In this document: one piece after another, positions 3,891-30,452 of the stretch
Layout: each line of letters begins with the position of its first letter
How positions within the stretch are numbered: the stretch's first letter is position 1
Virus record (IMG/VR): IMGVR_UViG_3300028676_000003
Span: 62,001-126,000 of that record
Length of the DNA stretch: 64,000 nt
Direction: 5' to 3' (one strand)
Made by a program: the position numbers and the translations under genes
Notes under the pieces: model-generated
The model's database searches: none
Seen by the model: the letters and a program-made list of their open reading frames with translations, nothing else
What the model was told of the DNA's origin: nothing

Positions 3891-4232
3891 ATGAATGCTA
3901 ATAAATTTTTATTGACAGCTAATCAAGGTAATAGAACTGCACTAGATAAAGCATATAATAATCATATGAATTCTGTCTTGAATTCTTTCGACGAAGAAGA
4001 AGAGAATAGATGGGAAACGTATAATTTAGTGATAAGCGAGCTTATGTCGCAAGGTAATAAGAATTATTTCAAAGAGGTTAAATATCGTTTAACTGACGGT
4101 GAAAATCCAAATGAAATTATTCTAGATATCATTGACAGAGCAAACGACGATGCAAGTAGTCTTGTATGGTTACTTAAACGTAGAATTGAGGAATATGTTG
4201 AGGATGATTATTTTAAAAGATTTTTGGTCTAA
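3891..4232 (+). CDS. Hypothetical protein, paralog of 3459..3779
   Basis: WETYNLVISEL ... YRLTDGENPNEI. Confidence 0.75.
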   Translation: MNANKFLLTANQGNRTALDKAYNNHMNSVLNSFDEEEENRWETYNLVISELMSQGNKNYFKEVKYRLTDGENPNEIILDIIDRANDDASSLVWLLKRRIEEYVEDDYFKRFLV

Positions 4233-4236
4233 GCTA

Positions 4237-4267
4237 TTGTCAAGTTTCTTTTTTTTGCGTATATTTG
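4237..4267 (+). promoter_or_regulatory. Bacteroidota-type sigma70 promoter (LRR gene)
   Basis: TTG-N20-TATATTTG. Confidence 0.8.
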
Positions 4268-4286
4268 TATAAAGACACACAAAAGA

Positions 4287-8227: not shown

Positions 8228-9319
8228 ATGGAAAGAGTTATACAAAAACTAGAAAGAGCTACTATACCTCTTGTATCTAGTGTCATTAAAGACGAATTTA
8301 TCGCTGCAAGTGAAACTGCTTTTGACTGTGCTTTTAACGGTACATCAACATTTTATCCTTGGAAGATGCCCGATATACCTAAAGACTTCAAGTTAGGAAT
8401 TATCGTAGGTTCTTCAGGTTCGGGGAAATCTACACTTCTTAAAGAATTTGGTACAGAAGAAGTTCCTGTTTGGGAATCTGACAAATCAATCATATCACAT
8501 TTCGAAACACCAAACGATGGAATCAACAAGCTTATGGCCGTTGGACTGAATTCTATACCGTCTTGGTACAAGCCATATCACGTATTATCCAATGGTGAAA
8601 AATTTAGAGCTGATTTAGCACGCAAATTACGCACGAACTGTGTCATAGATGAGTATACTTCCGTTGTAGATAGAAACGTGGCTAAGGCGGCTTCTGTGAG
8701 CTTATCTAAGTATGTTCAAAGACATAAGTTAAGTGGAGTTGTTTTATCGACGTGTCATCATGACATTGTTGATTGGTTGGAACCTGATTGGGTTTTGAAT
8801 ACAGATACAGGTGAATTAATTCACGGTTTTTTTTTTAAAAGACCAAGCATCGATATTGAAGTATATCGCACAACAAATGAAAGTTGGCGAATGTTTAAAG
8901 ACCATCACTATTTAACTGGAAACCATAATTCAGCTTCAAGATGCTACTTGGCTGTTTGGAACGATACCGTTGTTGGATTTGCCAGCGTAATTACTATGCC
9001 TAGCGGAACCGTTAAGAATGCGTGGCGTGGACATAGGAGTGTTGTCTTGCCTGATTTTCAGGGAATGGGAATTGGTGTGAGATTTACTGAGGCTGTTGCT
9101 CAAATTCACTTGGATGAGGGACATAAGTTTTATTCTCGTACAGCTCACCCAAAGATGATAGAGTATAAGACTGCATCACCTTTGTGGAAACCGACTAGTA
9201 AAAATAAGAAGCTAAGAAAAGATGTTACCGATGATAATACCTTTAAGAATCACGTTTACGATAATAAACGTTTATGTGGTAGCTTTGAGTATATTGGTCC
9301 TAAACAAGACCAATCTTAA
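8228..9319 (+). CDS. ABC-type ATPase fused to GNAT acetyltransferase (COG2401-like)
   Basis: Walker A GSSGSGKST, LSNGE signature, Walker B VIDE; GNAT motif VLPDFQGMGIG. Confidence 0.9.
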   Translation: MERVIQKLERATIPLVSSVIKDEFIAASETAFDCAFNGTSTFYPWKMPDIPKDFKLGIIVGSSGSGKSTLLKEFGTEEVPVWESDKSIISHFETPNDGINKLMAVGLNSIPSWYKPYHVLSNGEKFRADLARKLRTNCVIDEYTSVVDRNVAKAASVSLSKYVQRHKLSGVVLSTCHHDIVDWLEPDWVLNTDTGELIHGFFFKRPSIDIEVYRTTNESWRMFKDHHYLTGNHNSASRCYLAVWNDTVVGFASVITMPSGTVKNAWRGHRSVVLPDFQGMGIGVRFTEAVAQIHLDEGHKFYSRTAHPKMIEYKTASPLWKPTSKNKKLRKDVTDDNTFKNHVYDNKRLCGSFEYIGPKQDQS

Positions 9320-10590: not shown

Positions 10591-13113
10591 TTACTTAGCT
10601 ACTTTGCTTTTTTTTACCTTGACAATGATTTGACCTGTTTTCTTGTCCAAGTCAATAAGGATTGTTTCACCTTCTTTAACATTTTCGTTAAGGATTTCAT
10701 CAGCCACAGGGTCTTCAACGTAGTGTTGAATTGCTCTACCAAGAGGTCTAGCACCATATGTCTCATCATAACCTTTATCTGCAAGATAATCAACTGCTGA
10801 TGGGGTGATTTCGAACTTGAAGTGTAATTCTCCAATTCTAGATTCCAACTTAGCCAACTCTAAATAGATGATTTCGTTGATATCTTCTTTACGTAAGCTG
10901 TTGAAGATGATTGCTTCATCGATACGGTTAAGGAACTCAGGCTTGAATTTTTTCTTAAGCTCTTTATCAATGATGTTTCTAGCTCTTAATTCAGTGTCCA
11001 TTACGCTATCGATTGTCTCGAATCCCATTTTTCTACCGAAGCTTGAAACTTCTTTAACACCGATGTTTGATGTAAGGATGATAAGCGCATTCTTAAAGTT
11101 AACCTTACGACCTAAACCGTCAGTTAATTGTCCTTCATCCAACAATTGTAACAATATATTGAATACATCAGGGTGTGCTTTTTCAATCTCATCAAAAAGG
11201 ATAACACAATGAGGTTTTCTACGAACCTTTTCTGTTAATTGTCCCCCTTGGTCATACCCCACATATCCAGGAGGTGGACCAACTAAACGAGATACTGAAT
11301 GTTTCTCCATGTATTCCGACATATCCATACGGATAAGAGCATCTGAGTCTCCGAAAACTTGTTCAGCCAATAACTTAGCCAAAAGAGTCTTTCCAACACC
11401 AGTTGGACCTAAGAAAATAAACGAACCTACTGGTTTATTTTTATCTTTGATACCAATACGGTTTCTTTTGATAGCCTTAACAACCTTAGTAACAGCGGCA
11501 TCTTGTCCGATTACCTTACCTTGTAAGTCTTTATCCATGTTGATAAGCTTTTTACCTTCTTGGGTTGAGATTTTACTTAAAGGAATTCCAGTCATCATCG
11601 AAACGATTTCTGAGATTAATTCAACACCAACTTCGGTAATTTTCCCGTCAAGAGTAGCTTCCCATTCAGCTGTAGCAGTTTCAAGTTCACTTTGGATTTC
11701 TTTTTCAACATCACGAAGCTTAGCGGCTTCTTCGTATTTCTGTCTGATAACAACTTCTTTTTTCTCTTCGTTTATTTCTAAGCGTCTAGCTTCAAGTCGT
11801 TTGATATTTTCAGGTTTCTCAACGCTAACACCAGTGCTTGAACCAGCTTCATCTAATACGTCGATTGCTTTATCAGGCATAGCTCTATCCATGATATATC
11901 TATCAGAAAGCTTAACACATTCCTCAATAGCTTCATCAGTGAATTTAACCTTGTGATGTTTTTCGTATTTATCCTTGATATTCATAAGGATAGTTTTTGT
12001 TTCTTCAAGAGTTGGTTCATTAACCAATACAGGTTGAAAACGTCTTGTAAGGGCACCATCTTTTTCAATATTTTCACGATACTCATCAAGAGTAGTAGCA
12101 CCAATACATTGGATTTCACCTCTTGCTAAAGCAGGTTTAAGAATATTTGAAGCATCAAGGGAACCCGAAGCGTTTCCAGCACCTACAATAGTATGTAACT
12201 CATCAATAAACAAGACTACTTCAGGGTTTGCTTTACATTCTTCAAGAATGGCTTTCATTCTTTCTTCGAATTGTCCACGGTATTTTGTACCTGCAACGAT
12301 TGACGCTAATTCAAGGGTCATAATACGTTTATTTGCAAGGGTTCTAGGAGCTTCACCATCTTTGATAAGTTGAGCAAGACCTTCAATTATACTGGTTTTA
12401 CCAACACCTGGGTCTCCGATAAGAACTGGATTGTTTTTCTTTCTACGTGAAAGAATTTGTGAAACTCTTTTGATTTCCACTTTACGACCAACTACTGGGT
12501 CAATTTCACCTCTTTCAACGGCTTTAGATACGTCTCTACAGAAATTATCTAGAACTTGTGTTTTTGATTTGGAATCGTTTGTTGTCGGTTTTTTGAAGTT
12601 ACGCATAGACTTGTTTAAATCGTCTTGGTCTTCGTCGTCACCACTAAAGGCACTGTTTTTGTTTTCTTTGTTCCCCATATCTTTCATTATTTTTAAAAAA
12701 CTATTATACGTTACACCACCTTCTCTTGAAAGGTGATTGTTAACTGGTATTTCGGCACGTAGTATTCCTAACATAAGATGGGTTGTATCAATAACAGAAT
12801 CATTTAGTTTCTCACATTCTGAGTCTACTGTTTTGATTATCAATTTCATGTCTTTAGAAAATGGCAATTTACCTTTTTTGGACCCTACTCTAGGTGTTAA
12901 GTCGGTGTCTCTTAAATACTGAGAAACTTTATCGTGTAGTTCTTCAGTATTCACTTTTAATTTTTCGAACACTTGAGTACATGCATTATCATCGTCTTGT
13001 AAGATAGATAATAGTATGTGTTCGGGTTTGATTTCAATATCATCAAACGTCTTTGCCACAACCGTAGCTTGATTCATTATAATTTTTACTTTAGGAAAAA
13101 TATCATTATTCAT
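10591..13113 (-). CDS. clpC: ClpC-type Hsp100 AAA+ ATPase
   Basis: Clp-N domain, GDPGVGKT and GPTGVGKT Walker A motifs, UVR-like middle domain ([11 protein letters not shown]), MGF ClpP-binding loop. Confidence 0.93.
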
Positions 13114-15783: not shown

Positions 15784-15808
15784 AAAGCATCGTTTAGATG
15801 CTTTTTTT
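15784..15808 (+). terminator. Intrinsic terminator (thyA)
   Basis: AAAGCATC/GATGCTTT plus T run. Confidence 0.8.
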
Positions 15809-16147: not shown

Positions 16148-16870
16148 ATGAAAAACAATAACATAAATGTAAACCCAATTGGTTTAAAAGGTTCTGAAGT
16201 TAACGCTCGTATGAAAGAGTTAATGGGAATTAGCACTATCAACGAAAACAAAACCAATTCTAAGGTTGAATTAACTAAGATTGGTCCTGATGGGAAGTCT
16301 TATGCTATCATAAGAGAAAACCATAAATACTTTATCAAAAGCAGTGAAAAAACCAAAGGTTTAATTGCTGAAGATTTTAGCTACATTGGTGGTTTAAAAA
16401 ACAAAACTTCTGAAGCTTACGATTCATATGCTAGTGCTATCAAACACTTGAACATCAACTTTAAATCACTTGCTGATGCACATGGTCAAGGTGGTGATAT
16501 CAACGTGTTCAAAAACGACAACTTGATTAATGAATCAGGTGTTGCTGGATTCTCTAATCATAGTGGTAACGGTTTCTCAGGTGCTGGTAACATGGAAGGT
16601 AACACTCCATTATACGAAGATACTGAAGAAGTAACTGAAGGTTATGATGACGAACCATACTACGACGATGTTAAAGGTAAAAAAAGCGACAGATGGGATT
16701 CTGATGATGCTGACGACAAAGAAAGCGATGATGCTGATGATATGTCAGAAGCTGAATTGGCTGTTGATGCTATCCTACAAGAAACTGAAGGTAAGAGATT
16801 ATCTATCCGTTTTGCTATGGAGAACATGGACGCTATCATTGAGTCTATCGACGTAAAAAAAAAAGACTAG
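16148..16870 (+). CDS. Putative prohead core protein, N-terminal part (ends at A10 run)
   Basis: Acidic, several INE/INES sites; ends GTA AAA AAA AAA GAC TAG. Confidence 0.75.
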   Translation: MKNNNINVNPIGLKGSEVNARMKELMGISTINENKTNSKVELTKIGPDGKSYAIIRENHKYFIKSSEKTKGLIAEDFSYIGGLKNKTSEAYDSYASAIKHLNINFKSLADAHGQGGDINVFKNDNLINESGVAGFSNHSGNGFSGAGNMEGNTPLYEDTEEVTEGYDDEPYYDDVKGKKSDRWDSDDADDKESDDADDMSEAELAVDAILQETEGKRLSIRFAMENMDAIIESIDVKKKD

Positions 16871-17715
16871 TTAAAGAAGAAAAATATACATTAAAGGTTG
16901 CGAGCCCTGCGCCAGCACCTGTTCCACAACCCCAAGAACCAGCACCTACTGCTGGTTTTGGTGCTTCTGAAAACCCTGAACCAACTGATAAACCATTCAA
17001 CGATGAACCGTTTGATGCTGGTGTTGAGGCCGATGAAGAAACAGACCCAAAAAGATACATTGAACAATTAACTGGAAAGCTTGGACAATCACTTAGACAA
17101 TATACGTCTAGTATTGGTCGTCCTGATTTCGACCTTGAAAAGTTCGCAATAAATTCATTATTGTCAGCTACTCATACCGCTGAAATGGATGAAAAAGATA
17201 GAGAAGATATAATAACTAAAGTTAACACAGCTGGTAACAATGATGACGATTCAGAGAATTCTGATTTTGATAGTACTGACCGTACTCCCGATAATAACGA
17301 TGGTAGTAACGATGGGGGTAATGATGAGTTTGGCGGTGATGCTGAATTTGGGAATGATAACGATGAAGAAGACTTGGAAGAAGTCCAAATATACGAAAAC
17401 GAAAGTCTTTTTCTTGAAGAGCCAGTGAGATGTAATATGTTTCAGCATGGGTCGAATGATATTTTAGATGAAACTCTTAATGAGGGCTTGATTAATCAAA
17501 AAAAAAGTAGTATCTTTGAAAAAAGATATTTAAAGTCTAAATTACAAGAAAGTTTTAATCAAGAAGAAGAAATGAAGAACAACGAAGAACCATTAACTGC
17601 ACCTGCGCCTGTCGTTAAACCTGACGTAAAGCCTGACGTGGCACCAAGTAGAAGAAATAAACCCTTCTTACCGATGCCTGAAGTGCAACCAGACCCTAAA
17701 GCTAAGAATGAGTAA
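16864..17715 (+). CDS. Minus-1-frame continuation of 16148..16870 (Pro/acidic putative core protein)
   Basis: Frame open 16843-17715; first ATG only at 17185; 16864-17160 encodes protein-like RLVKEEKYTLKV ... DPKRYIEQLTGKLGQSLRQY. Confidence 0.7.
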   Translation, partial: RLVKEEKYTLKVASPAPAPVPQPQEPAPTAGFGASENPEPTDKPFNDEPFDAGVEADEETDPKRYIEQLTGKLGQSLRQYTSSIGRPDFDLEKFAINSLLSATHTAEMDEKDREDIITKVNTAGNNDDDSENSDFDSTDRTPDNNDGSNDGGNDEFGGDAEFGNDNDEEDLEEVQIYENESLFLEEPVRCNMFQHGSNDILDETLNEGLINQKKSSIFEKRYLKSKLQESFNQEEEMKNNEEPLTAPAPVVKPDVKPDVAPSRRNKPFLPMPEVQPDPKAKNE

Positions 17716-18128
17716 TGAAAGACTTATTCTTAATCTACATCAACGTAGTTGGTAAGGATTACACAGGGAACTTCATCTATGAATTCATATTGTCAGATAC
17801 AATAGAAGACATAGATGGAGAAGAATGGGACACGTTTCCAGCTTCGGGAAGACCAGCACCACCACATGTTAATTTCATTAAAAAGGTAGGTCGTCTCGAA
17901 ACTGAAATTCAATTGGATGTAATTCAAAATAGTGATACGTTCGCTGTTTGGGATGCAGTCGATGGAGTTATAGCTTTGGCTTGGGAATATATCAATGCAT
18001 ATGATTCATATCCTGAGAAAAGACTTTGTTTTAAATTTGGTGAACCAATTGAAGAAGTTGAGGCCAAGTTATATGAAAAAGACCTAATACTAGACTATAA
18101 ATACAAAACACATGAAAAAACTAAATAA
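17715..18128 (+). CDS. Hypothetical protein
   Basis: TAATG-coupled 137-aa ORF. Confidence 0.75.
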   Translation: MKDLFLIYINVVGKDYTGNFIYEFILSDTIEDIDGEEWDTFPASGRPAPPHVNFIKKVGRLETEIQLDVIQNSDTFAVWDAVDGVIALAWEYINAYDSYPEKRLCFKFGEPIEEVEAKLYEKDLILDYKYKTHEKTK

Positions 18129-20507: not shown

Positions 20508-20563
20508 ATTACCCATAAATTAGGAGTAATCTTGTAACCCTTAATTTTTAGGCATTTGCGACA

Positions 20564-20571
20564 TATTTATA
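20564..20571 (+). promoter_or_regulatory. Putative late promoter (terL)
   Basis: TATTTATA 20 nt before ATG. Confidence 0.65.
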
Positions 20572-20591
20572 AGAAACTAAAACTTATAATT

Positions 20592-22361
20592 ATGTTAACA
20601 ACAAATGAAATATTTAAGGAATATTCTAAGTGTTTGATGAATCCAGCATACGCTATTGAAACGTATTTGGAAACATTCGATAAAACACAAGAAGGTTTTG
20701 TGCCGTTTAAACTATTTCCAAGACAGCATGAAATTATCAAAGCATACGATAAACACAGATTTAATATTGTAACAAAACCAAGACAAGCTGGTGTATCAAC
20801 AACTACTGCCGCTTATATGTCTATCAAGGTTGGTTGGGCTGACCCTGAGAACCCTGAGAGTATTCTTATTATTGCCAATAAACAAGAACTTGCATTTGAG
20901 TTCTTAGGAAAGATTAAAGATTTCTTAAGACAACTTCCAAGATGGGTTTGGGGTGAAGAATACTATGGAACACCACAAAAAGAAGGTAAATCTATTTTTA
21001 ATACAGATTCAAAAAAAGAAATCAAATTACCAAATGGAAGCCGTGTTAAAGCCGTTGCGACATCTAAGGATGCCCTTCGTGGATTTACACCAACTTATCT
21101 TGTAATGGATGAGGCCGCTTATATTGATAATGGAGCTGAGGTGTTTGGTGCCGCTCTTACATCGTTAGGTACTGGGGGTAGAGCTACCCTTATTTCTACA
21201 CCTAATGGTATGGATGCTTTATACTACAAAACATATGACCAAGCTATCAATAAAAGAAATAACTTTAATGTTATTGAAATGAAATGGTACGAAGACTTAC
21301 GTTATAATAAAGACTTACGTTGGATTAGAGGTGATGAAGAAGAAGAAGAACCTGATAAGTTATCATTCGCAACATATGAACAAAGAATCAAGGACGGTTG
21401 GAAACCAACATCTTCTTGGTATGAGGAAATGTGTCTTGGTATGAACAACGATGAAAAAATGATTGCTCAAGAGCTTGATGTATCATTCATTGGTTCAGGG
21501 GGTAATATCATCAACGAGAAATATATAGAATATCAAGAAAAAAATAATGTTCAAAAACCAATGTTATATTTTGGGCCTGAACAAGAAACTTGGGTTTGGG
21601 CTGAACCTAAAGAAGGACACCAATACATTATGGGTGTCGATGTAGCTAGAGGTGATGGTGCCGATGCTTCAACTATTGTTATTATTGATTTTACAACAAT
21701 GGAACAAGTTATGGAATACCAAGCTAAGATTCAACCCGATTTGCTTGCACACGTTGTGTTTGAATGGGGTAATCGTTATAAAGCTTATACTGTCGTAGAT
21801 ATTACTGGTGGTATGGGTGTTTCTACAGTACTTAAGCTTCTTGAATTAAACTACAAACACTTACACTACGATACTACTGTTGGGAAGATTCTTTCACCTA
21901 AACAAAGAAATATGCAAATTATGAATAATTCTGAAAAAATCCCAGGTTTCCAAGCCAATGGTGTACGTACATCTATGGTTGCAAATCTAGAATACAGAAT
22001 TAGAGAAAACCACGTAAAGATTCGTTCATCAAGAATGATTTCTGAAATGAAAACATTTATCTATGATAAGAATGGTCGTCCTGACCACATGGCTGGATAT
22101 CATGATGATTTACTTATGTCACTAGGTATGGCTTTATGGGTATTGGATAATTCATTCAAAAATTTAGAAAGACTTGAAGCTCAAACTAAAGCTATTCTTA
22201 ATTCTTGGATGAGTACTGGAACTCAACACACTTTGAATAGTGTTGATGCTAGTGGTAAAGAGGTAAGAAAACCAGTTCATGCGAAGCCATTTGTGAACCC
22301 ACGTGACCCAAAAGGTGAACATATGTGGTTATTTGCTGGTATGGCTGGTAATAAAAGGTAA
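20592..22361 (+). CDS. terL: Terminase large subunit (T4 gp17-like)
   Basis: KPRQAGVST Walker A, LVMDEAA Walker B, ISTPNG motif III, GVDVARG and HDDLLM nuclease motifs; start set at ATG 20592. Confidence 0.96.
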   Translation: MLTTNEIFKEYSKCLMNPAYAIETYLETFDKTQEGFVPFKLFPRQHEIIKAYDKHRFNIVTKPRQAGVSTTTAAYMSIKVGWADPENPESILIIANKQELAFEFLGKIKDFLRQLPRWVWGEEYYGTPQKEGKSIFNTDSKKEIKLPNGSRVKAVATSKDALRGFTPTYLVMDEAAYIDNGAEVFGAALTSLGTGGRATLISTPNGMDALYYKTYDQAINKRNNFNVIEMKWYEDLRYNKDLRWIRGDEEEEEPDKLSFATYEQRIKDGWKPTSSWYEEMCLGMNNDEKMIAQELDVSFIGSGGNIINEKYIEYQEKNNVQKPMLYFGPEQETWVWAEPKEGHQYIMGVDVARGDGADASTIVIIDFTTMEQVMEYQAKIQPDLLAHVVFEWGNRYKAYTVVDITGGMGVSTVLKLLELNYKHLHYDTTVGKILSPKQRNMQIMNNSEKIPGFQANGVRTSMVANLEYRIRENHVKIRSSRMISEMKTFIYDKNGRPDHMAGYHDDLLMSLGMALWVLDNSFKNLERLEAQTKAILNSWMSTGTQHTLNSVDASGKEVRKPVHAKPFVNPRDPKGEHMWLFAGMAGNKR

Positions 22362-22409: not shown

Positions 22410-24476
22410 ATGGCAGATAAAAAATTAACAATATTTAATAGATTAGGTCAAGTACTTAATCCTAACTATATTGCGACAAAGCAACAACAACCATCTCAAA
22501 GATACAATATCGGTAGTAACGAATTACTTAGAACCGATAGTAAAGCTGAGTATGAGCGAGCAAAGTTACAAGCGATGCAAAACAAATTGCTTGGAAATAC
22601 TTGGAAGAAAGTTGAAACTGGACTTTTCCAACAATCGATTAATTATGAAACAACACGTATTGGTTCATATTCTGATTTTGAAGCAATGGAATTCTACCCT
22701 ACGATTGCGGCCGCTTTGGACGTAATGATGGAAGAATCTACAACAATCAACGATAACGGTAGAATCATGAATATCTATTCAGATAGCAAGCGTGTTAAGG
22801 GTATCTTAGAGGACCTTTTCTTCAACAGACTTGACGTACACACTGCTTTACCTATGTGGACTAGAAATACGTGTAAATACGGGGATAATTTCGTTTATTT
22901 GAACATCAATGATACTCATGGTATTCTTGGTGCTAAGCAAATGCCTAATTACGAAATGGAACGTAGAGAAACTGGTTTATTTGATATGGTTTCAGGTAGA
23001 GAATTACCTGAAGAAGAACAAACAACTACAGATAAGGTTAAATTCTTTTGGAGAGGTCGTGATGTTGAATTCAACTCTTGGCAAATTGCTCACTTTAGAC
23101 TTCTAGGTGATGACAGACGTTTACCTTATGGAACTAGTATCTTAGAGAAAGCTAGACGTATTTGGAAACAACTTGTATTATCAGAAGACTCTATGCTTGT
23201 GTATCGTGTTACACGTGCGCCTGAGAGACGTGTTTATAAAATTTATGTTGGTAACATTGATGATGCCGATGTGGAAGCTTATGTAAATACAATTGCTGAC
23301 AGATTTAAAAGAACTCAAGTTATTGACCCAGCGACTGGACAAATTGATTTAAGATTTAACCAATTGGCTAATGACCAAGATTACTTTATTCCTGTTAGAA
23401 GCGAGGATGCTCCTAACCCTATTGATACACTGCCTGGGGCTCAGAACTTGGACCAAATTGCTGATATTGAATACTTACAAAGAAACTTATTTACTGCACT
23501 TCGTGTACCAAAGCCTTTCTTAGGGTTTGAAGATACAGCTGGTGAAGGTAAAAACTTAGCATTACAAGATATTCGTTTCTCTAGAACAATCAATAGAATT
23601 CAACAATCTATGCTTCAAGAGATGAATAAACTAGCTATCATTCATTTATACATTCTTGGTTTTGAAGAAGAATTGGATAATTTTACTCTTACGTTGAATA
23701 ATCCTTCTACACAAGCTGAAATGCTTAAGGTTGAACACATGCAACAAAAAATTACTCTTCTTAAAGATGCAGTTTCTGATACTGGTAACGGATTTGGTGC
23801 AATGTCTTGGACAAGAGCTCACAGAGAAATCATGGGTTGGTCAGATGATGATATCAAACAAGATTTACTTGAACAACGTATGGAAAAAGCAGCGGCCGCT
23901 GAGTTGGCTAATTCTGCTAACGTTATCAAGCATACTGGTATGTTCGATACTGTTGATAAGATTTACGGTGATTACCAAGTAGCACTTAATGGTGGAATGC
24001 CTGAAGGTGGTGCTCCTGCTGAAGGTGGTGAAGAAGGTGCCGCTGGTGGTGGACTTGGTGGTTCATTCGGTGGTGGCGGTGGTGGAGGTGAAGACCTTGA
24101 CTTCGGAGCTGATGAAGAAGAAGTAGACTTGGATGCTGAGGCTGATGGTGGAGATTTTGGTGGTGAAGAAGGTGGAGATGTAGATGCTGGCGAGGCACCT
24201 GACGGAGACGCTGTAGAAGCACCTGCTGAAACTGTTAACGAGTCTATTAGAATATACGAAAAGAAACTTCTTAATGAGAAGGTTCAATTAAGTAAAAGAC
24301 TTGAGCAAAGAACTCAAAAATACCAAGGAAAATGGATTGATGCTTTGATTGAGAATTTCGTTCATGACAAAAAAGATAAAAGTGTTGAGAGTATTAAAAT
24401 GACCGATAAGAATATCAAAATAAATGAAGGTGTTGATTCTATGATAAAAGATATCAATAATATGTTAGATGAATAA
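22410..24476 (+). CDS. Portal protein (T4 gp20-like)
   Basis: EDSMLVYRVTRAPERRVYKIYVGN, QDYFIP, I.TLPGAQNL, DIEY....LF.ALRVP, RFSRTI.RIQ. Confidence 0.96.
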   Translation: MADKKLTIFNRLGQVLNPNYIATKQQQPSQRYNIGSNELLRTDSKAEYERAKLQAMQNKLLGNTWKKVETGLFQQSINYETTRIGSYSDFEAMEFYPTIAAALDVMMEESTTINDNGRIMNIYSDSKRVKGILEDLFFNRLDVHTALPMWTRNTCKYGDNFVYLNINDTHGILGAKQMPNYEMERRETGLFDMVSGRELPEEEQTTTDKVKFFWRGRDVEFNSWQIAHFRLLGDDRRLPYGTSILEKARRIWKQLVLSEDSMLVYRVTRAPERRVYKIYVGNIDDADVEAYVNTIADRFKRTQVIDPATGQIDLRFNQLANDQDYFIPVRSEDAPNPIDTLPGAQNLDQIADIEYLQRNLFTALRVPKPFLGFEDTAGEGKNLALQDIRFSRTINRIQQSMLQEMNKLAIIHLYILGFEEELDNFTLTLNNPSTQAEMLKVEHMQQKITLLKDAVSDTGNGFGAMSWTRAHREIMGWSDDDIKQDLLEQRMEKAAAAELANSANVIKHTGMFDTVDKIYGDYQVALNGGMPEGGAPAEGGEEGAAGGGLGGSFGGGGGGGEDLDFGADEEEVDLDAEADGGDFGGEEGGDVDAGEAPDGDAVEAPAETVNESIRIYEKKLLNEKVQLSKRLEQRTQKYQGKWIDALIENFVHDKKDKSVESIKMTDKNIKINEGVDSMIKDINNMLDE

Positions 24477-24520: not shown

Positions 24521-25282
24521 ATGCAAAATTTTGGTAAAATAAAAAATACGTTTAACGGGATTTTGTCCGAAGCTTTGGTTACTAACAATAACAAAGACAA
24601 GCAATTATTCGGTAAATACGTTAAAACAATCAAGGAAAATAAAGTATTAAGAACTCAGTTTTTGATATACAATAATATTGAAAATAAGGTAGAAGATAAC
24701 GAATTCAAAGCAAGCTTGTTCTTGCAAGAAAACCTAAACCTTTTAAACCAATTTTCAAAGAAAGAGATTTTAGAGGCTAATCAAAAGTTAGCTTCTTCTT
24801 TATCTGAAATTTCAGAGGACTGTGATAAAGCAAGCCTTTATGAAAATATTTCTACTCTAATTTTTACTGATAGAATCAGTGAAAACATTGATACGGTAAT
24901 TGATGCCACAGCTAATATCATTAAATACATAATGGAAAATAAGTCAAAAGAGGTTAATGAATCTTTTGATTTACCTACCACTATGTTGACAAGTATTATG
25001 GTTGACAAATACAATGACAAGTACTCAACTATCGATGAGTCTGATTTAAAGATTATCAAGTCTTTAATCGATTCTACCGATGAAACGAAAAAACAAGTTT
25101 ACACTGAAACAGTAAGAGAATGCATTGATTTAATCAATGAACAATATGCTGATGCTTCTCTAGAAACAAAGGAGAAACTATTGAAAGTTAAAGATAAATT
25201 GTTAAACGATAAAGCTGAAATCAATGAAGATTATTTGACTAATATTACAAAATTAGTTGAGTTAAAGAGCAGTTTACAATAA
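24521..25282 (+). CDS. Helical hypothetical head-module protein
   Basis: Start set at ATG 24521 (MQNFG), 15 nt after late motif. Confidence 0.75.
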   Translation: MQNFGKIKNTFNGILSEALVTNNNKDKQLFGKYVKTIKENKVLRTQFLIYNNIENKVEDNEFKASLFLQENLNLLNQFSKKEILEANQKLASSLSEISEDCDKASLYENISTLIFTDRISENIDTVIDATANIIKYIMENKSKEVNESFDLPTTMLTSIMVDKYNDKYSTIDESDLKIIKSLIDSTDETKKQVYTETVRECIDLINEQYADASLETKEKLLKVKDKLLNDKAEINEDYLTNITKLVELKSSLQ

Positions 25283-26455: not shown

Positions 26456-27181
26456 ATGGATATAAATTATAAAGATTTAAAGGTATTAAAACGTGGTGAA
26501 AGTGGAACAGGTTATCTTATTGAACAAGATGCTGGTTATATTTCACCTGACGAACCAAGAAATCAACCTTTCATTAACGAAATCAAGAAACTTGATGGTG
26601 GAAACAGACTAGCGATAGTTGAGCCGCTTATTGTTTTCGTTGTACTACAAAAATACGGTATTCTTAACCGTAATGGGAGAATCTATCCTGAAGCAATCTT
26701 AAGAAGACAAGACCAATTATATCAACAAGCGATTAAAGAACGTAGAGCTGTAGGTGAATTAGACCACCCTGAATCTAGTATTATTGCTGGTGACAGAATA
26801 TCTCATAACATCATTGAAACATGGTGGGAAGGACAAACTCTTATGGGTAAGATGGAGATATTGATGACTCCTGGGTTTATTAATTATGGTATTGTTTCTA
26901 CTAAAGGAGACGAAGTTGCAAATTTACTAAGAAATAGAATTAAGATTGGTGTATCTTCTAGAGGTGTTGGTTCACTTAAAGAAGGTAGAAATGGTGAGCA
27001 AATTGTTCAAGAGGATTTCGAGATTATTTGTTGGGACGTAGTAACGGCTCCATCAACTCCTGATGCTTGGATATTCAGAAGTCACGAAGAATCTAGACCT
27101 TATGTTGAGAACGTAGAAGTGAAAAAACCACTACTAAAAGAAAGCTTAAATGATGATTTGGATAAATTTTTATCTGAATAG
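26456..27181 (+). CDS. Prohead protease (T4 gp21-like)
   Basis: NRNGRIYP, GELDHPE, GVSSRGVGS, WDVVTAPSTPDAW. Confidence 0.96.
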   Translation: MDINYKDLKVLKRGESGTGYLIEQDAGYISPDEPRNQPFINEIKKLDGGNRLAIVEPLIVFVVLQKYGILNRNGRIYPEAILRRQDQLYQQAIKERRAVGELDHPESSIIAGDRISHNIIETWWEGQTLMGKMEILMTPGFINYGIVSTKGDEVANLLRNRIKIGVSSRGVGSLKEGRNGEQIVQEDFEIICWDVVTAPSTPDAWIFRSHEESRPYVENVEVKKPLLKESLNDDLDKFLSE

Positions 27182-28625: not shown

Positions 28626-30452
28626 ATGTCACACTTATTAACATCTGGACAAGTTGGAAATATCGGATTAAACCACATGAAGGCTATCCGTAAAGAGACT
28701 CAATCTAAATGGGATTCATTAGGATTCCTTGACGGTCTTAAAGGTCACGTTAAAGAGAATATCGCTCAATTATACGAAAACCAAGCGTCAACATTATTAA
28801 CTGAAAGCACAACGACAAACTCTTCAGGTTCATTCGAAACTGTAGTTTTCCCAATCGTTCGTAGAGTTTTCTCAAAATTATTAGCTAACGATATCGTTTC
28901 TGTACAAGCTATGAACATGCCAATTGGTAAATTGTTCTACTTCGTACCAGTTACATCAAGCCGTGTGGATGCTTTAGGTAACCCTGGTTCTGATTACGCT
29001 GCAAACGGTGGTAACGGAGCTTACGCAACTCAATACTCTGCACACACAGGTATGGCGGCTCAAGGTCTTCCATCATGTGTTGTTGGTTCAGGTTGTACAC
29101 TTACTCCATTCGAGGGTAAAAACTTATACGATGCATTCTACAATGACGGTTTATTTGATAACTCAAAAGGTACTCTTACAATCGTTGCAGGTGGATATAA
29201 CGTATACACTTTAGGTATTGACGGTAAATATACAGTTGCGACTGGAGCTGCTCAATTACCAACAGCTAATGACGGTTCATTAAGAGAAGTTGTTATCGGT
29301 ATCACTGGATTCTCTCCAAACGTACACGCTAAACAAGTTATGACAGGTGCTAACGGTGACCCAATGGACACTGAATCATTCTTAGCTTCATTACACGTTC
29401 TTTCAACTAATGCAATTTTAGATAAAGATGGTAATACAATTATCGCTGCTGGTAAGGAAATTCCTTTCAGATTAGTAACTCAACAATACGGTAGAGGTAT
29501 CGTAGACTACACTAACTTAACAGATACTTCAGGTACTCTTTATGTTGCTTTAGATTTACGTCACCCTGTTGGAACATCTGCTGGTGTTATTGGTGGTGCT
29601 GGAACATCAACTTATGATGGTTACGTTGGAGCTTCTGCTTCTACAGTATCAGCGTTTACTTTCACTGCGGCTTGGGCTGAGTACGCTACATTAGAGCTTG
29701 AAACTGAAATGGGAGAGGTATCTTTCAAATTAGATGAAATCGTTGTTGCGGTTGAAGAAAGAAAATTACGTGCTACATGGTCTCCTGAGTTAGCTCAAGA
29801 CGTTAGTGCATTCCACAACATTGATGCAGAAGCTGAATTAACAGCTATGTTATCTGAGCAAGTTGCTGCGGAAATCGATAGAGAAATCTTGAGAGAGTTA
29901 CGTAAAGCTGGTGCTTGGCAATTAAGATGGGATTACAACGGTTGGAGAAAAGCTTCTACAGCGGCAAGCCCATACACACAAAAAGACTGGAACCAAACTT
30001 TAATCACTAGATTAAACCAAGTTTCTGCACAAATCCACAAGTCTACTCTTAGAGGTGGTGCTAACTTTATCGTAGTTTCTTCTGAAATCTCTGCTATCTT
30101 TGATGATTTAGAATACTTCCACGTAAGTGATGCTAACCCAGAGCAAGACCAATATAACATGGGTATCGAAAGAATCGGTTCTTTATCAGGACGTTTCCAA
30201 GTATACCGTGACCCTTATGCTCCAGCTTATTCAATTATCATTGGACACAAAGGTAAATCATTATTAGACACAGGGTATATCTATGCTCCATACGTGCCTC
30301 TTCAATTGACACCTACAATGTTTAATCCGTTTAACTTTGCGCCAGTAAAAGGTATCATGACACGTTATGCTAAAAAAGTGGTTAACAACAGATTCTACGG
30401 ACACGTAAGAGTTGACGGTGTACCTACATTCGACGTAAACGAATTAAGATAA
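28626..30452 (+). CDS. Major capsid protein (T4 gp23-like)
   Basis: VFPIVRRVF ... VSVQAMNMPIG, RKLRATWSPELAQDV, AEAEL...LSEQVAAEIDREI, GYIYAPYVPL, GIMTRYA. Confidence 0.97.
   Translation: MSHLLTSGQVGNIGLNHMKAIRKETQSKWDSLGFLDGLKGHVKENIAQLYENQASTLLTESTTTNSSGSFETVVFPIVRRVFSKLLANDIVSVQAMNMPIGKLFYFVPVTSSRVDALGNPGSDYAANGGNGAYATQYSAHTGMAAQGLPSCVVGSGCTLTPFEGKNLYDAFYNDGLFDNSKGTLTIVAGGYNVYTLGIDGKYTVATGAAQLPTANDGSLREVVIGITGFSPNVHAKQVMTGANGDPMDTESFLASLHVLSTNAILDKDGNTIIAAGKEIPFRLVTQQYGRGIVDYTNLTDTSGTLYVALDLRHPVGTSAGVIGGAGTSTYDGYVGASASTVSAFTFTAAWAEYATLELETEMGEVSFKLDEIVVAVEERKLRATWSPELAQDVSAFHNIDAEAELTAMLSEQVAAEIDREILRELRKAGAWQLRWDYNGWRKASTAASPYTQKDWNQTLITRLNQVSAQIHKSTLRGGANFIVVSSEISAIFDDLEYFHVSDANPEQDQYNMGIERIGSLSGRFQVYRDPYAPAYSIIIGHKGKSLLDTGYIYAPYVPLQLTPTMFNPFNFAPVKGIMTRYAKKVVNNRFYGHVRVDGVPTFDVNELR

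What the first reader, a model, noticed from the sequence alone, without database searches (positions are those of the whole stretch)
16148..17715. Head-module gene split by a minus-1 shift at an A10 run
Seen: ORF 16148 ends GTA AAA AAA AAA GAC TAG (A10 at 16855-16864). The minus-1 frame is open 16843-17715, has no ATG until 17185 and no promoter motif, yet 16864-17160 encodes clearly protein-like sequence. A shift gives a 522-aa fusion versus 240 aa. Established: A AAA AAA heptamers and A9+ runs support ribosomal or transcriptional slippage; programmed phage frameshifts are best known in tail chaperone and capsid genes. Inference: fixed-ratio short and long core proteins. An assembly homopolymer error is the alternative.
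Basis: partly seen in the sequence, partly recalled or inferred. Interest (0 to 1): 0.6.

Follow-up and report, generated by a model that had tools for sequence, protein, structure and literature searches.

The report
Conserved A-run frameshift in huge phages
A gene of an uncultured 368-kb T4-like phage is split into two reading frames at a run of ten A's, and 95 diverged relatives keep the same split and run, so it is a deliberate slip site that makes a short and a long protein from one gene, not a sequencing error.

Summary
The A10 run lies at 16855-16864. ORF1 (16148-16870, 240 aa) stops one codon after it. The -1 frame is open from 16843 to 17715, and a -1 shift gives a 522-aa fusion.

It is not an assembly error. 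In IMG/VR, 95 distinct relatives keep an A9-A11 run at the ORF1 end, followed by 256-825 further codons in the -1 frame (86 A10, 8 A9, 1 A11, none shorter). These relatives form 36 clusters at 85% identity in the first 71 alone. More distant homologues are single continuous ORFs that align colinearly across the junction. ORF2 is under purifying selection (dN/dS 0.10-0.37). Its near-invariant three-helix domain lies upstream of any start codon. An independent groundwater contig also carries A10.

I found no conserved RNA structure, and the phage does not use Shine-Dalgarno sites. Run length is conserved while the codon phase of the run varies. I therefore favour +1-A transcriptional slippage by the host RNA polymerase (about 0.6) over ribosomal -1 frameshifting (about 0.3). 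No RNA data were available to decide between them.

The protein's function is unknown, and the "core protein" label is unproven. Conserved (L/I/V)xE motifs flank the junction and the phage encodes a T4-type prohead protease, which hints at a processed head-internal protein. This is a new member of a known kind of recoding.

The parts
16148..16870 (+). ORF1 (zero frame), 240 aa: the short product. It has an N-terminal alpha/beta domain, an acidic linker, a helix and a KKK tail.
   Evidence: The ORF1 architecture is kept in all split relatives.
16148..16552 (+). Conserved N-terminal domain with the motifs RENH(K/E)Y(F/Y)IK and YIGGLxNK. The predicted fold is helix, three strands, helix.
   Evidence: Alignment A2 has 52 sequences and 63% mean column identity. 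The AlphaFold2 model has pLDDT 71.5. No functional match was found in PDB, BFVD or the Atlas.
16840..16842 (+). TGA stop that closes the -1 frame just 5' of the run, so the two frames overlap only around the run.
   Evidence: In relatives the -1 frame opens at most 25 codons before the run; in seven it opens only inside the run.
16855..16864 (+). A10 slippery run, the recoding site.
   Evidence: The run is A9-A11 in all 95 distinct split relatives and never shorter than 9. A groundwater contig spans it with no gaps (record 19).
16868..16870 (+). Zero-frame TAG stop, one codon after the run.
   Evidence: In relatives the zero-frame stop lies 1-24 nt after the run.
16864..17715 (+). ORF2 part of the long product, read in the -1 frame from the last A of the run. 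The fusion is 522 aa.
   Evidence: dN/dS is 0.10-0.37 in this frame. No in-frame start codon occurs before 17161.
16864..16905 (+). Conserved junction peptide: KKK, then a (L/I/V)xE motif, then a K(Y/F)(K/T)LK(L/V) motif.
   Evidence: all 71 sequences have [LIV]xE within 11 residues after the junction. The motif is also present in the continuous homologues.
17047..17229 (+). Near-invariant three-helix domain of ORF2 (LGQSLR..PDF.LEKFAINS..SAT..EMD..DII.KV), reachable only through the frameshift.
   Evidence: 26 invariant columns in A3; helices at residues 62-83, 89-102 and 110-122, pLDDT about 80. No PDB match.
17647..17712 (+). Conserved C-terminal basic, proline-rich motif (RR.KP..(I)PE..PDPKPKA type).
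   Evidence: Alignment.
17498..17506 (+). A second, in-frame A9 run inside ORF2. It is lineage-specific and may be a secondary slippage site.
17715..18128 (+). Downstream gene orf137. Its ATG overlaps the ORF2 stop (TAATG), so translational coupling is possible.
   Evidence: A homologue was found in 60 of 77 loci; in 35 of the 56 split loci with a hit it begins exactly at the ORF2 end.

Best explanation
This is one gene expressed as two proteins through a programmed -1 recoding event at an A10 run. Unslipped mRNA yields the 240-aa ORF1 protein. In a set fraction of transcripts the host's multisubunit RNA polymerase slips backwards on the homopolymer and adds one A (A11). Ordinary translation of those transcripts runs from ORF1 into the -1 frame and makes a 522-aa fusion that carries the strongly conserved three-helix ORF2 domain. 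The ancestral state was a single continuous ORF. One clade of T4-like huge phages acquired the run and has kept it, presumably to fix the ratio of short to long product. What is shown: the split, the conservation of the run, selection on ORF2, the lack of an independent start codon, and the absence of conserved ribosomal stimulators. What is inferred: that the slip happens at transcription, its efficiency, and the protein's role. The role may be a head-internal protein processed by the prohead protease. The confidence given (0.58) is for the full statement including the transcriptional mechanism. That the site is a genuine programmed recoding site, whichever machine slips, I put at about 0.93.
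For: All 95 distinct split homologues have A9-A11 (86 A10, 8 A9, 1 A11), none has fewer than 9, and every one needs a -1 shift. The split forms are monophyletic, with 71 tips, support 0.91 and 17 aa substitutions per site of total branch length. They are sister to the continuous 536-624-aa forms, which align colinearly across the junction. A word search found 484 further relatives of the continuous L025 form; those aligned over the whole query are 537-656 aa.

Lysine codons inside the run are always AAA, apart from the run-terminal AAG in four phase-1 A10 lineages. Conserved lysine columns elsewhere in the gene use AAG in 17% of cases. dS reaches 1.5 while the run persists, and ORF2 has dN/dS of 0.10-0.37.

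The run occurs in all three codon phases while its length stays at 9-11. The 60 nt downstream are less structured than control windows (-6.8 vs -8.0 kcal/mol). A hairpin abutting the run upstream is seen in 16 of 71 sequences against 7-13 of 71 in controls. The phage avoids Shine-Dalgarno motifs: 3.7% of ORFs have one, against 9.6% of random positions.

No RpoB-like polymerase domain was found in the genome, in a search whose controls worked, so the host polymerase is the likely transcriber. The literature supports the mechanism: bacterial polymerase slips on runs of 9 A/T (PMC5009743); single-nucleotide insertions dominate and rise exponentially with run length (PMC5574713); A runs longer than 7 are linked to transcriptional realignment, and two-ORF dnaX genes with A10 have been described (PMC3711429). 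Finally, an independent groundwater contig has A10 with no gaps.
Against: There is no RNA evidence: no RNA run holds this sequence, and only contigs could be laid, at depths of 2-3. Every run also contains in-frame A AAA AAA heptamers, so ribosomal -1 slippage is possible and would give the same junction peptide. In-frame A9, A10 and T10 runs sit inside intact ORFs here and in relatives (window 8827-8836 and 17498-17506). Runs of this length are therefore tolerated, which argues against very high slippage rates. Many lineages have a GAAGG- or GAGGG-type purine motif 3-12 nt upstream of the run. That motif could pair with 16S rRNA if the host uses its anti-SD. The window itself lacks the motif.
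Confidence: 0.58

Rival explanations
1. Programmed -1 ribosomal frameshifting. Ribosomes decoding AAA AAA in the run slip back one base on the uniform A tract and continue in the -1 frame. The mRNA is a faithful A10 copy.
For: An X XXY YYZ heptamer (A AAA AAA) is available in the zero frame in every lineage. Four phase-1 A10 lineages (L021, L056 and L130, plus L183, which is the L021 contig fetched again) read GAA AAA AAA AAG, which contains the classical A AAA AAG site. The zero-frame stop lies close behind the run. Purine-rich GAAGG or GAGGG motifs lie upstream in many lineages.
Against: No lineage has shortened the run to the 7 nt that a ribosome needs; the minimum among 95 is 9. There is no conserved downstream hairpin or pseudoknot, and the downstream region is less structured than controls. 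The phage genome does not use SD sites, and the upstream purine motif is missing in the window and varies in spacing. The distance to the zero-frame stop varies from 1 to 24 nt, so the stop is not a fixed stimulator.
Confidence: 0.3
2. Assembly or sequencing homopolymer error, or a recently broken pseudogene. The real gene would be one continuous ORF.
For: Homopolymers are error-prone. Distant homologues are continuous ORFs. Logan contigs of run X2 break at the run.
Against: The same split is seen in 95 distinct sequences from many unrelated metagenomes. Run-length variants arose by substitution at the run ends, not by indels, and none of the 95 is in frame. The overlap window is tightly bounded by stops in both frames. 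ORF2 is under purifying selection at saturated dS. An independent contig shows A10.
Confidence: 0.02
3. Two separate genes. ORF2 would be translated from its own start, with the A run acting as an A-rich, SD-independent leader of the kind this phage uses upstream of its start codons.
For: Start codons in this phage are preceded by A-rich leaders, with 64% A at positions -12 to -10. Some lineages have a TTG or ATG 6-14 codons after the run.
Against: No conserved start codon exists. In the window the first ATG, GTG or TTG is 98 codons after the run, and in at least 15 lineages it is more than 90 codons after, downstream of the near-invariant helical domain or inside it. The conserved peptide starts immediately at the run and is colinear with the continuous homologues.
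Confidence: 0.03
4. DNA-level phase variation. Replication slippage would switch the gene between a split (A10) state and a fused (A11 or A8) state within phage populations.
For: Poly-A tracts also slip during replication (PMC3711429).
Against: None of the 95 distinct assemblies is in the fused state. The only independent contig across the site is A10.
Confidence: 0.03

Closest known systems
dnaX of Thermus thermophilus (A9 transcriptional slippage) and the two-ORF dnaX genes with A10 in Chlorobi (Antonov et al. 2013, PMC3711429; Atkins et al. 2016, PMC5009743)
   Same: A homopolymeric A9-A10 run inside a gene, with two products that share an N-terminus. The Chlorobi genes also have a two-ORF layout in which the long product needs the slip. 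In both cases the inference rests on conserved run length.
   Different: The protein family is unrelated and the genome is a phage, not a bacterial chromosome. In Thermus the long form is the in-frame one, whereas here the long form is trans-frame. Slippage is demonstrated experimentally there and not here.
E. coli dnaX and IS-element -1 ribosomal frameshifting at A AAA AAG
   Same: An A-rich slippery heptamer, a -1 direction, and short and long products in a set ratio.
   Different: Those sites depend on an upstream SD-like element and a downstream hairpin. Neither is conserved here, and here the run is never shorter than 9.
Phage structural-gene frameshifts: the tail assembly chaperone G/GT of lambda-like phages, T7 gene 10A/10B, and the major head protein of phage A2
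   Same: A dsDNA phage gene in a morphogenesis-associated block makes a minor C-terminally extended form by a -1 shift, conserved across diverged phages.
   Different: Those cases are ribosomal, use heptamers such as G GGA AAG, and sit in known capsid or tail-chaperone families. This gene has no family assignment and uses a long homopolymer.
Shigella spa13/mxiE/spa33/mxiA and Citrobacter tssM transcriptional slippage (PMC5009743, PMC4256274)
   Same: The host multisubunit RNA polymerase slips on A or T runs to produce extended variants of components of a large assembly.
   Different: Those are bacterial secretion-system genes in narrow taxa. Here the site is conserved over a deep phage clade with saturated synonymous divergence.
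Retroviral Gag-Pol (logic only)
   Same: A frameshift fuses a minority cargo to an abundant assembly protein, and a virion protease then separates them. Here (L/I/V)xE motifs flank the junction and a Peptidase_S77 prohead protease is encoded nearby.
   Different: This is purely an analogy. Neither packaging nor cleavage has been shown here.

Membership tests
Programmed transcriptional realignment (slippage) sites | Homopolymeric A or T run at least as long as the RNA:DNA hybrid (about 8-9 nt or more) | tested here: met
   A10 in the window. A9-A11 in all 95 distinct relatives, none shorter.
Programmed transcriptional realignment (slippage) sites | The frame reached is the one produced by the commonest slippage product (+1 nt) | tested here: met
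   All 95 need +1 A, which equals the -1 frame. Single-nucleotide insertions dominate in A/T runs (PMC5574713).
Programmed transcriptional realignment (slippage) sites | The site works regardless of codon phase and without ribosomal stimulators | tested here: met
   The run is found in phases 0, 1 and 2 with its length kept. No conserved structure or SD was found.
Programmed transcriptional realignment (slippage) sites | mRNA shows run-length heterogeneity that is absent from the DNA | not testable with these tools
   No RNA run holds the locus. Only DNA contigs could be laid.
-1 programmed ribosomal frameshift cassettes | X XXY YYZ slippery heptamer in the zero frame | tested here: met
   A AAA AAA is present in every lineage.
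-1 programmed ribosomal frameshift cassettes | Conserved downstream stem-loop or pseudoknot 5-9 nt after the site | tested here: not met
   Mean MFE of the downstream 60 nt is -6.8 against -8.0 in control windows. The hairpins present are lineage-specific and abut the run.
-1 programmed ribosomal frameshift cassettes | Upstream SD-like stimulator at a fixed spacing | tested here: inconclusive
   GAAGG or GAGGG motifs occur in many lineages but at variable spacing, and are absent in the window. The phage's genes do not use SD.
T4-type prohead core or internal proteins (gp21/Peptidase_S77 substrates) | Sequence or fold homology to gp22, gp67, gp68, IPs or Alt | tested here: not met
   No Pfam, PHROG, PDB, BFVD or Atlas match apart from uncharacterised homologues.
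T4-type prohead core or internal proteins (gp21/Peptidase_S77 substrates) | (L/I)xE cleavage motifs at domain borders, with a cognate protease encoded | tested here: inconclusive
   The protease is at 26456-27181 (PF03420, E 1e-24). [LIV]xE occurs within 11 residues after the junction in 71 of 71 sequences. [LI]xE observed/expected is 2.2 against 1.17 genome-wide, which is modest.
T4-type prohead core or internal proteins (gp21/Peptidase_S77 substrates) | Presence in proheads or virions | not testable with these tools
   No cultured relative was found: tblastn against 50,697 phage records gave no match.
Phase-variable contingency locus (DNA slippage) | Both ON (in-frame) and OFF run lengths are found among genomes | tested here: not met
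   0 of 95 distinct sequences is in frame.

The most novel reading that the evidence does not exclude
The slip site may be the dosing device of a Gag-Pol-like packaging system. The abundant ORF1 protein would be a prohead-internal or scaffold-like component. The rarer ORF1-ORF2 fusion would carry the invariant three-helix ORF2 domain into the prohead at a ratio set by polymerase slippage. The T4-type S77 prohead protease would then cut at the conserved (L/I/V)xE sites on both sides of the KKK junction and free the cargo. Because the ORF2 stop overlaps the start of the next conserved gene (TAATG), slippage might also dose that gene through translational coupling.
Probability: 0.15. Interest if true: 0.75.

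Novelty: new member of a known kind. Interest (0 to 1): 0.62.

Why it matters
Programmed recoding in tailed phages is known mainly as ribosomal -1 shifts in tail-chaperone genes and a few capsid genes. Here a long homopolymer site is conserved across a deep, environmentally widespread clade of uncultured T4-like huge phages from peat, soil, groundwater and freshwater. It lies in a gene family with no annotation. Gene callers split the gene into two or miss the second half, so its most conserved domain is absent from protein catalogues as a full-length product. If the slip is transcriptional, it would be a clear case of a dsDNA phage exploiting host RNA polymerase infidelity to set protein stoichiometry, probably in an SD-independent, Bacteroidota-like host where classical frameshift stimulators may not work. 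In practical terms it gives an annotation rule for this family: join the two ORFs at the A run. It also provides a natural series of sites (A9, A10, A11 in three codon phases) for testing how run length sets slippage.

Tried and rejected
1. Megablast and tblastn of the locus and of both halves against 50,697 GenBank phage records found no match, so no cultured relative is available.

2. Pfam and PHROGs scans of ORF1, ORF2, the long ORF2s of relatives and the neighbouring genes gave nothing above threshold. The sub-threshold hits (GreA_GreB_N, DTX3L_a-b, DUF5754) were rejected.

3. Profile searches against PDB sequences found nothing. Foldseek and VIA-align searches with AlphaFold2 models of both conserved domains gave only uncharacterised phage homologues or chance-level scores of Z 5.2 or lower. 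The ESM Atlas returned only hypothetical phage proteins. The word search returned 484 relatives, all unnamed or 'hypothetical protein'.

4. RNA evidence was sought, but no RNA run holds the locus. The one run labelled RNA-Seq is probably DNA, and its one piece near the site (17188-17220) is a partial match that runs on unlike the window.

5. No conserved stimulatory RNA structure was found upstream or downstream of the run.

6. No other junction-type A/T run exists in the 368-kb genome.

7. The search for a T7-like RNA polymerase (PF00940) was uninformative because its controls did not ring.

8. Fused (A11-model) proteins were built and aligned only inside scripts. The external search and fold tools received the two halves, or natural continuous homologues, by reference. 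The joined sequence itself was never submitted.

9. No alternative genetic code was invoked.

Full report
**Setting.** The window is bases 62001-126000 of a 368,549-bp IMG/VR virus record that CheckV estimates as complete. GC content is about 33%. The genome encodes T4-type head genes:
- a large terminase at 20556-22361
- a Portal_T4 portal at 22410-24476
- a Peptidase_S77 (gp21-like) prohead protease at 26456-27181
- a Gp23-family major capsid protein at 28626-30452

The terminase is about 30% identical to those of an uncultured 484-kb phage and of cyanomyoviruses. The phage is therefore a distant T4-like huge phage. It occurs in peat, groundwater, soil and freshwater metagenomes.

**The observation.** All coordinates hold.
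- ORF1 runs 16148-16870 (240 aa) and ends GTA AAA AAA AAA GAC TAG. The A10 run is at 16855-16864.
- The -1 frame opens at 16843, right after a TGA, and runs to 17715.
- Its first ATG, GTG or TTG is the TTG at 17161, and its first ATG is at 17185.
- Adding one A to the run gives a 522-aa fusion.

An A10 run is not rare in this AT-rich genome: 6 are observed where about 10 are expected. This is, however, the only A/T run of 9 or more that lies on a junction of two long frames.

**It is not an artefact.**
- Three scans of IMG/VR returned 187 loci, several of them the same contigs fetched again. Every close relative has the same design: ORF1, then an A9-A11 run, then a zero-frame stop 1-24 nt later, then 256-825 further codons open only in the -1 frame.
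- After removing identical proteins there are 95 distinct split versions: 86 with A10, 8 with A9 and 1 with A11. None is shorter than 9 and none is in frame. The first 71 fall into 36 clusters at 85% identity of the N-terminal domain, with pairwise identity as low as 45%.
- On a tree of the N-terminal domain the split forms are monophyletic (support 0.91, 17 aa substitutions per site of total branch length). They are sister to homologues that are single continuous ORFs of 536-624 aa.
- Those continuous proteins align colinearly with the modelled fusions straight across the junction. A word search found 484 further relatives of one continuous form, L025; those aligned over the whole query are 537-656 aa.
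- ORF2 read in the -1 frame has dN/dS of 0.10-0.37 in 11 pairs, with dS up to 1.5 between the window and its nearest relatives.
- Lysine codons within the run are always AAA, apart from a run-terminal AAG in four phase-1 A10 lineages. Conserved lysine columns elsewhere in the same gene use AAG in 70 of 417 cases.
- Run-length variants differ by substitutions at the ends of the run, which preserve the frame relation, and not by indels.
- A contig from a groundwater metagenome of another study spans 16654-16904 with no mismatch and no gap (record 19). Contigs of a second sample simply break at the run. Depths are low (2-3), so this is supporting evidence rather than decisive evidence.

**ORF2 cannot be a separate gene.**
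- The most conserved part of the whole locus is a three-helix domain at window 17047-17229. Alignment A3 has 26 invariant columns across 48 sequences, and the model's pLDDT is about 80.
- This domain lies upstream of the first possible start codon in the window. In at least 15 other lineages no start codon appears for more than 90 codons.
- The conserved peptide begins at the run itself.
- In no lineage does the -1 frame contain a start codon before or within the run, and it opens at most 25 codons before the run.

**Which machine slips?** The evidence here is indirect.
- A ribosome needs only a heptamer, yet no lineage has let the run fall below nine.
- The run appears in all three codon phases while its length stays at 9-11. 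Most are xxA AAA AAA AAA. Four A10 lineages and the A11 form begin at the second codon position. The A9 forms and three A10 forms begin at the first.
- There is no conserved downstream structure. The 60 nt after the run are less structured than control windows. Hairpins abutting the run upstream are only marginally enriched, 16 of 71 against 7-13 of 71.
- The phage does not use Shine-Dalgarno sequences. Only 3.7% of 323 ORFs have a core motif upstream, against 9.6% of random sites, and leaders are A-rich and G-poor. This pattern is typical of Bacteroidota-like hosts (inference), so an SD-type stimulator is unlikely.
- No RpoB-like domain was found in the genome, in a search whose controls worked. 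The host's multisubunit polymerase therefore presumably transcribes the gene, as in T4.
- Bacterial polymerases slip on runs of about 9 A/T (PMC5009743). Insertions of a single nucleotide dominate and rise exponentially with run length (PMC5574713). Runs of more than 7 A's are the accepted signature of programmed transcriptional realignment, including two-ORF dnaX genes with A10 (PMC3711429).
- The frame required here in all 95 cases is exactly the one that a +1-A transcript gives.

I therefore put transcriptional slippage at about 0.6 and ribosomal -1 frameshifting at about 0.3. Both could contribute.

Three points count against a very high slippage rate or a purely transcriptional site:
- In-frame A9, A10 and T10 runs are tolerated inside intact ORFs.
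- Purine-rich GAAGG-type motifs precede the run in many lineages.
- Both mechanisms predict the same main junction peptide.

**What the protein does.** This is unknown. Neither half matches any Pfam or PHROG family, and no solved or predicted structure with a known function matches.

The architecture, in order along the fusion, is:
- a small alpha/beta N-terminal domain
- an acidic disordered linker
- a helix ending in KKK at the run
- a conserved junction motif
- a proline/alanine-rich stretch
- the three-helix domain
- more acidic linker
- a basic, proline-rich tail

Gene order is conserved: thyA, orf81, this gene, orf137, orf363. In the window, one more ORF and then the terminase, portal, protease and capsid genes follow. 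A terminator-like hairpin after thyA (15784-15804) suggests that the transcription unit starts just upstream.

(L/I/V)xE motifs match the specificity known for T4 gp21; that specificity is from my own knowledge of T4, not tested here. Such motifs sit at the end of the N-terminal domain, just before the KKK and within 11 residues after it in all 71 sequences. [LI]xE is 2.2-fold over expectation in the fusion, against 1.17 genome-wide. This suggests weakly that both products are substrates of the prohead protease, that is, head-internal proteins.

**Comparison and novelty.** The closest known systems are:
- dnaX of Thermus and the two-ORF A10 dnaX genes of Chlorobi (slippage)
- E. coli dnaX and IS elements (ribosomal)
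- the conserved phage G/GT and capsid frameshifts

This locus meets the sequence-level criteria of a transcriptional realignment site. It fails the downstream-structure criterion of classical -1 cassettes. The defining RNA heterogeneity could not be tested. I found no mention of frameshifting or slippage in a recent paper on related T4-like huge gut phages. Literature searches for slippage in phages also found no report of this gene family. I rate it a new member of a known kind.

Noticed in passing
window 17498-17506; L004, L005, L014 and L034 (ORF2, about 100 codons before the stop); L006, L012 and L013 (about 250 codons before the stop): Extra in-frame A9/A10 runs lie inside ORF2 in several lineages. 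There are 12 runs of 9 or more in 107 kb of ORF2, against 1 in 67 kb of ORF1. In L004, L005 and L014 the run lies at about the same distance from the ORF2 stop and appears to precede the extra C-terminal domain of that lineage group, so slippage there could yield a truncated third isoform.
   Followed up: partly
window 17713-17717 and most related loci: The ORF2 stop overlaps the ATG of the next gene, orf137 (TAATG). orf137 is 46-84% identical across relatives, and in 35 of the 56 split loci with a hit it starts exactly at the ORF2 end. Translational coupling could make its expression depend on the frameshift.
   Followed up: partly
whole genome G000, including the window: Start codons lack Shine-Dalgarno motifs (3.7% of ORFs against 9.6% of random positions) and sit behind A-rich, G-poor leaders (64% A at -12 to -10). 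This pattern is typical of Bacteroidota-type translation initiation and hints at the host phylum.
   Followed up: partly
L026-L028 (locus coordinates 4012-4282): In a distant homologue the N- and C-terminal homology regions lie in one 404-aa ORF. That ORF ends in an A9 run plus a stop, and the +1 frame continues for 85 codons that encode a hydrophobic, membrane-like segment. This may be a separate recoding site with the opposite shift.
   Followed up: partly
window 8827-8836, and genome position 233777-233786 (outside the window): An in-frame T10 run lies inside the intact 363-aa ORF 8228-9319, and an in-frame A10 lies inside another intact ORF. If the polymerase slips at A10, these genes should also give truncated by-products.
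   Followed up: no
window 28626-30452: The major capsid protein is 608 aa, but the Gp23 domain matches only residues 349-593. About 340 N-terminal residues are unassigned.
   Followed up: no
window 24521-25282: A 253-aa ORF lies between the portal and protease genes, where T4 has its prohead core genes gp67 and gp68. It has the same roughly 2.5-fold excess of [LI]xE motifs as ORF1 and matches no family.
   Followed up: no
window 10591-13113 (- strand): An 840-aa protein matches phrog_4871 'ATP-dependent protease' over its full length (E 2e-253). This is a large AAA+ chaperone or protease gene carried by the phage.
   Followed up: no
proteins P0067 and P0084 (continuous homologues); L022-L025: Some continuous-form homologues carry EF-hand-type calcium-binding loops (PF13202, PF00036) in the acidic region that replaces the linker of the split forms.
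   Followed up: no
window 15784-15804: An 8-bp hairpin followed by a T-run lies right after the thyA stop. It is the only terminator-like site near the locus and probably marks the start of the transcription unit that contains the recoded gene.
   Followed up: no
window 16851-16858, in run X2: Logan contigs of one peat sample end on either side of the A run (at 16851 and 16858). At low depth, assembly graphs break at this homopolymer, so a missing bridge there is not evidence about run length.
   Followed up: yes
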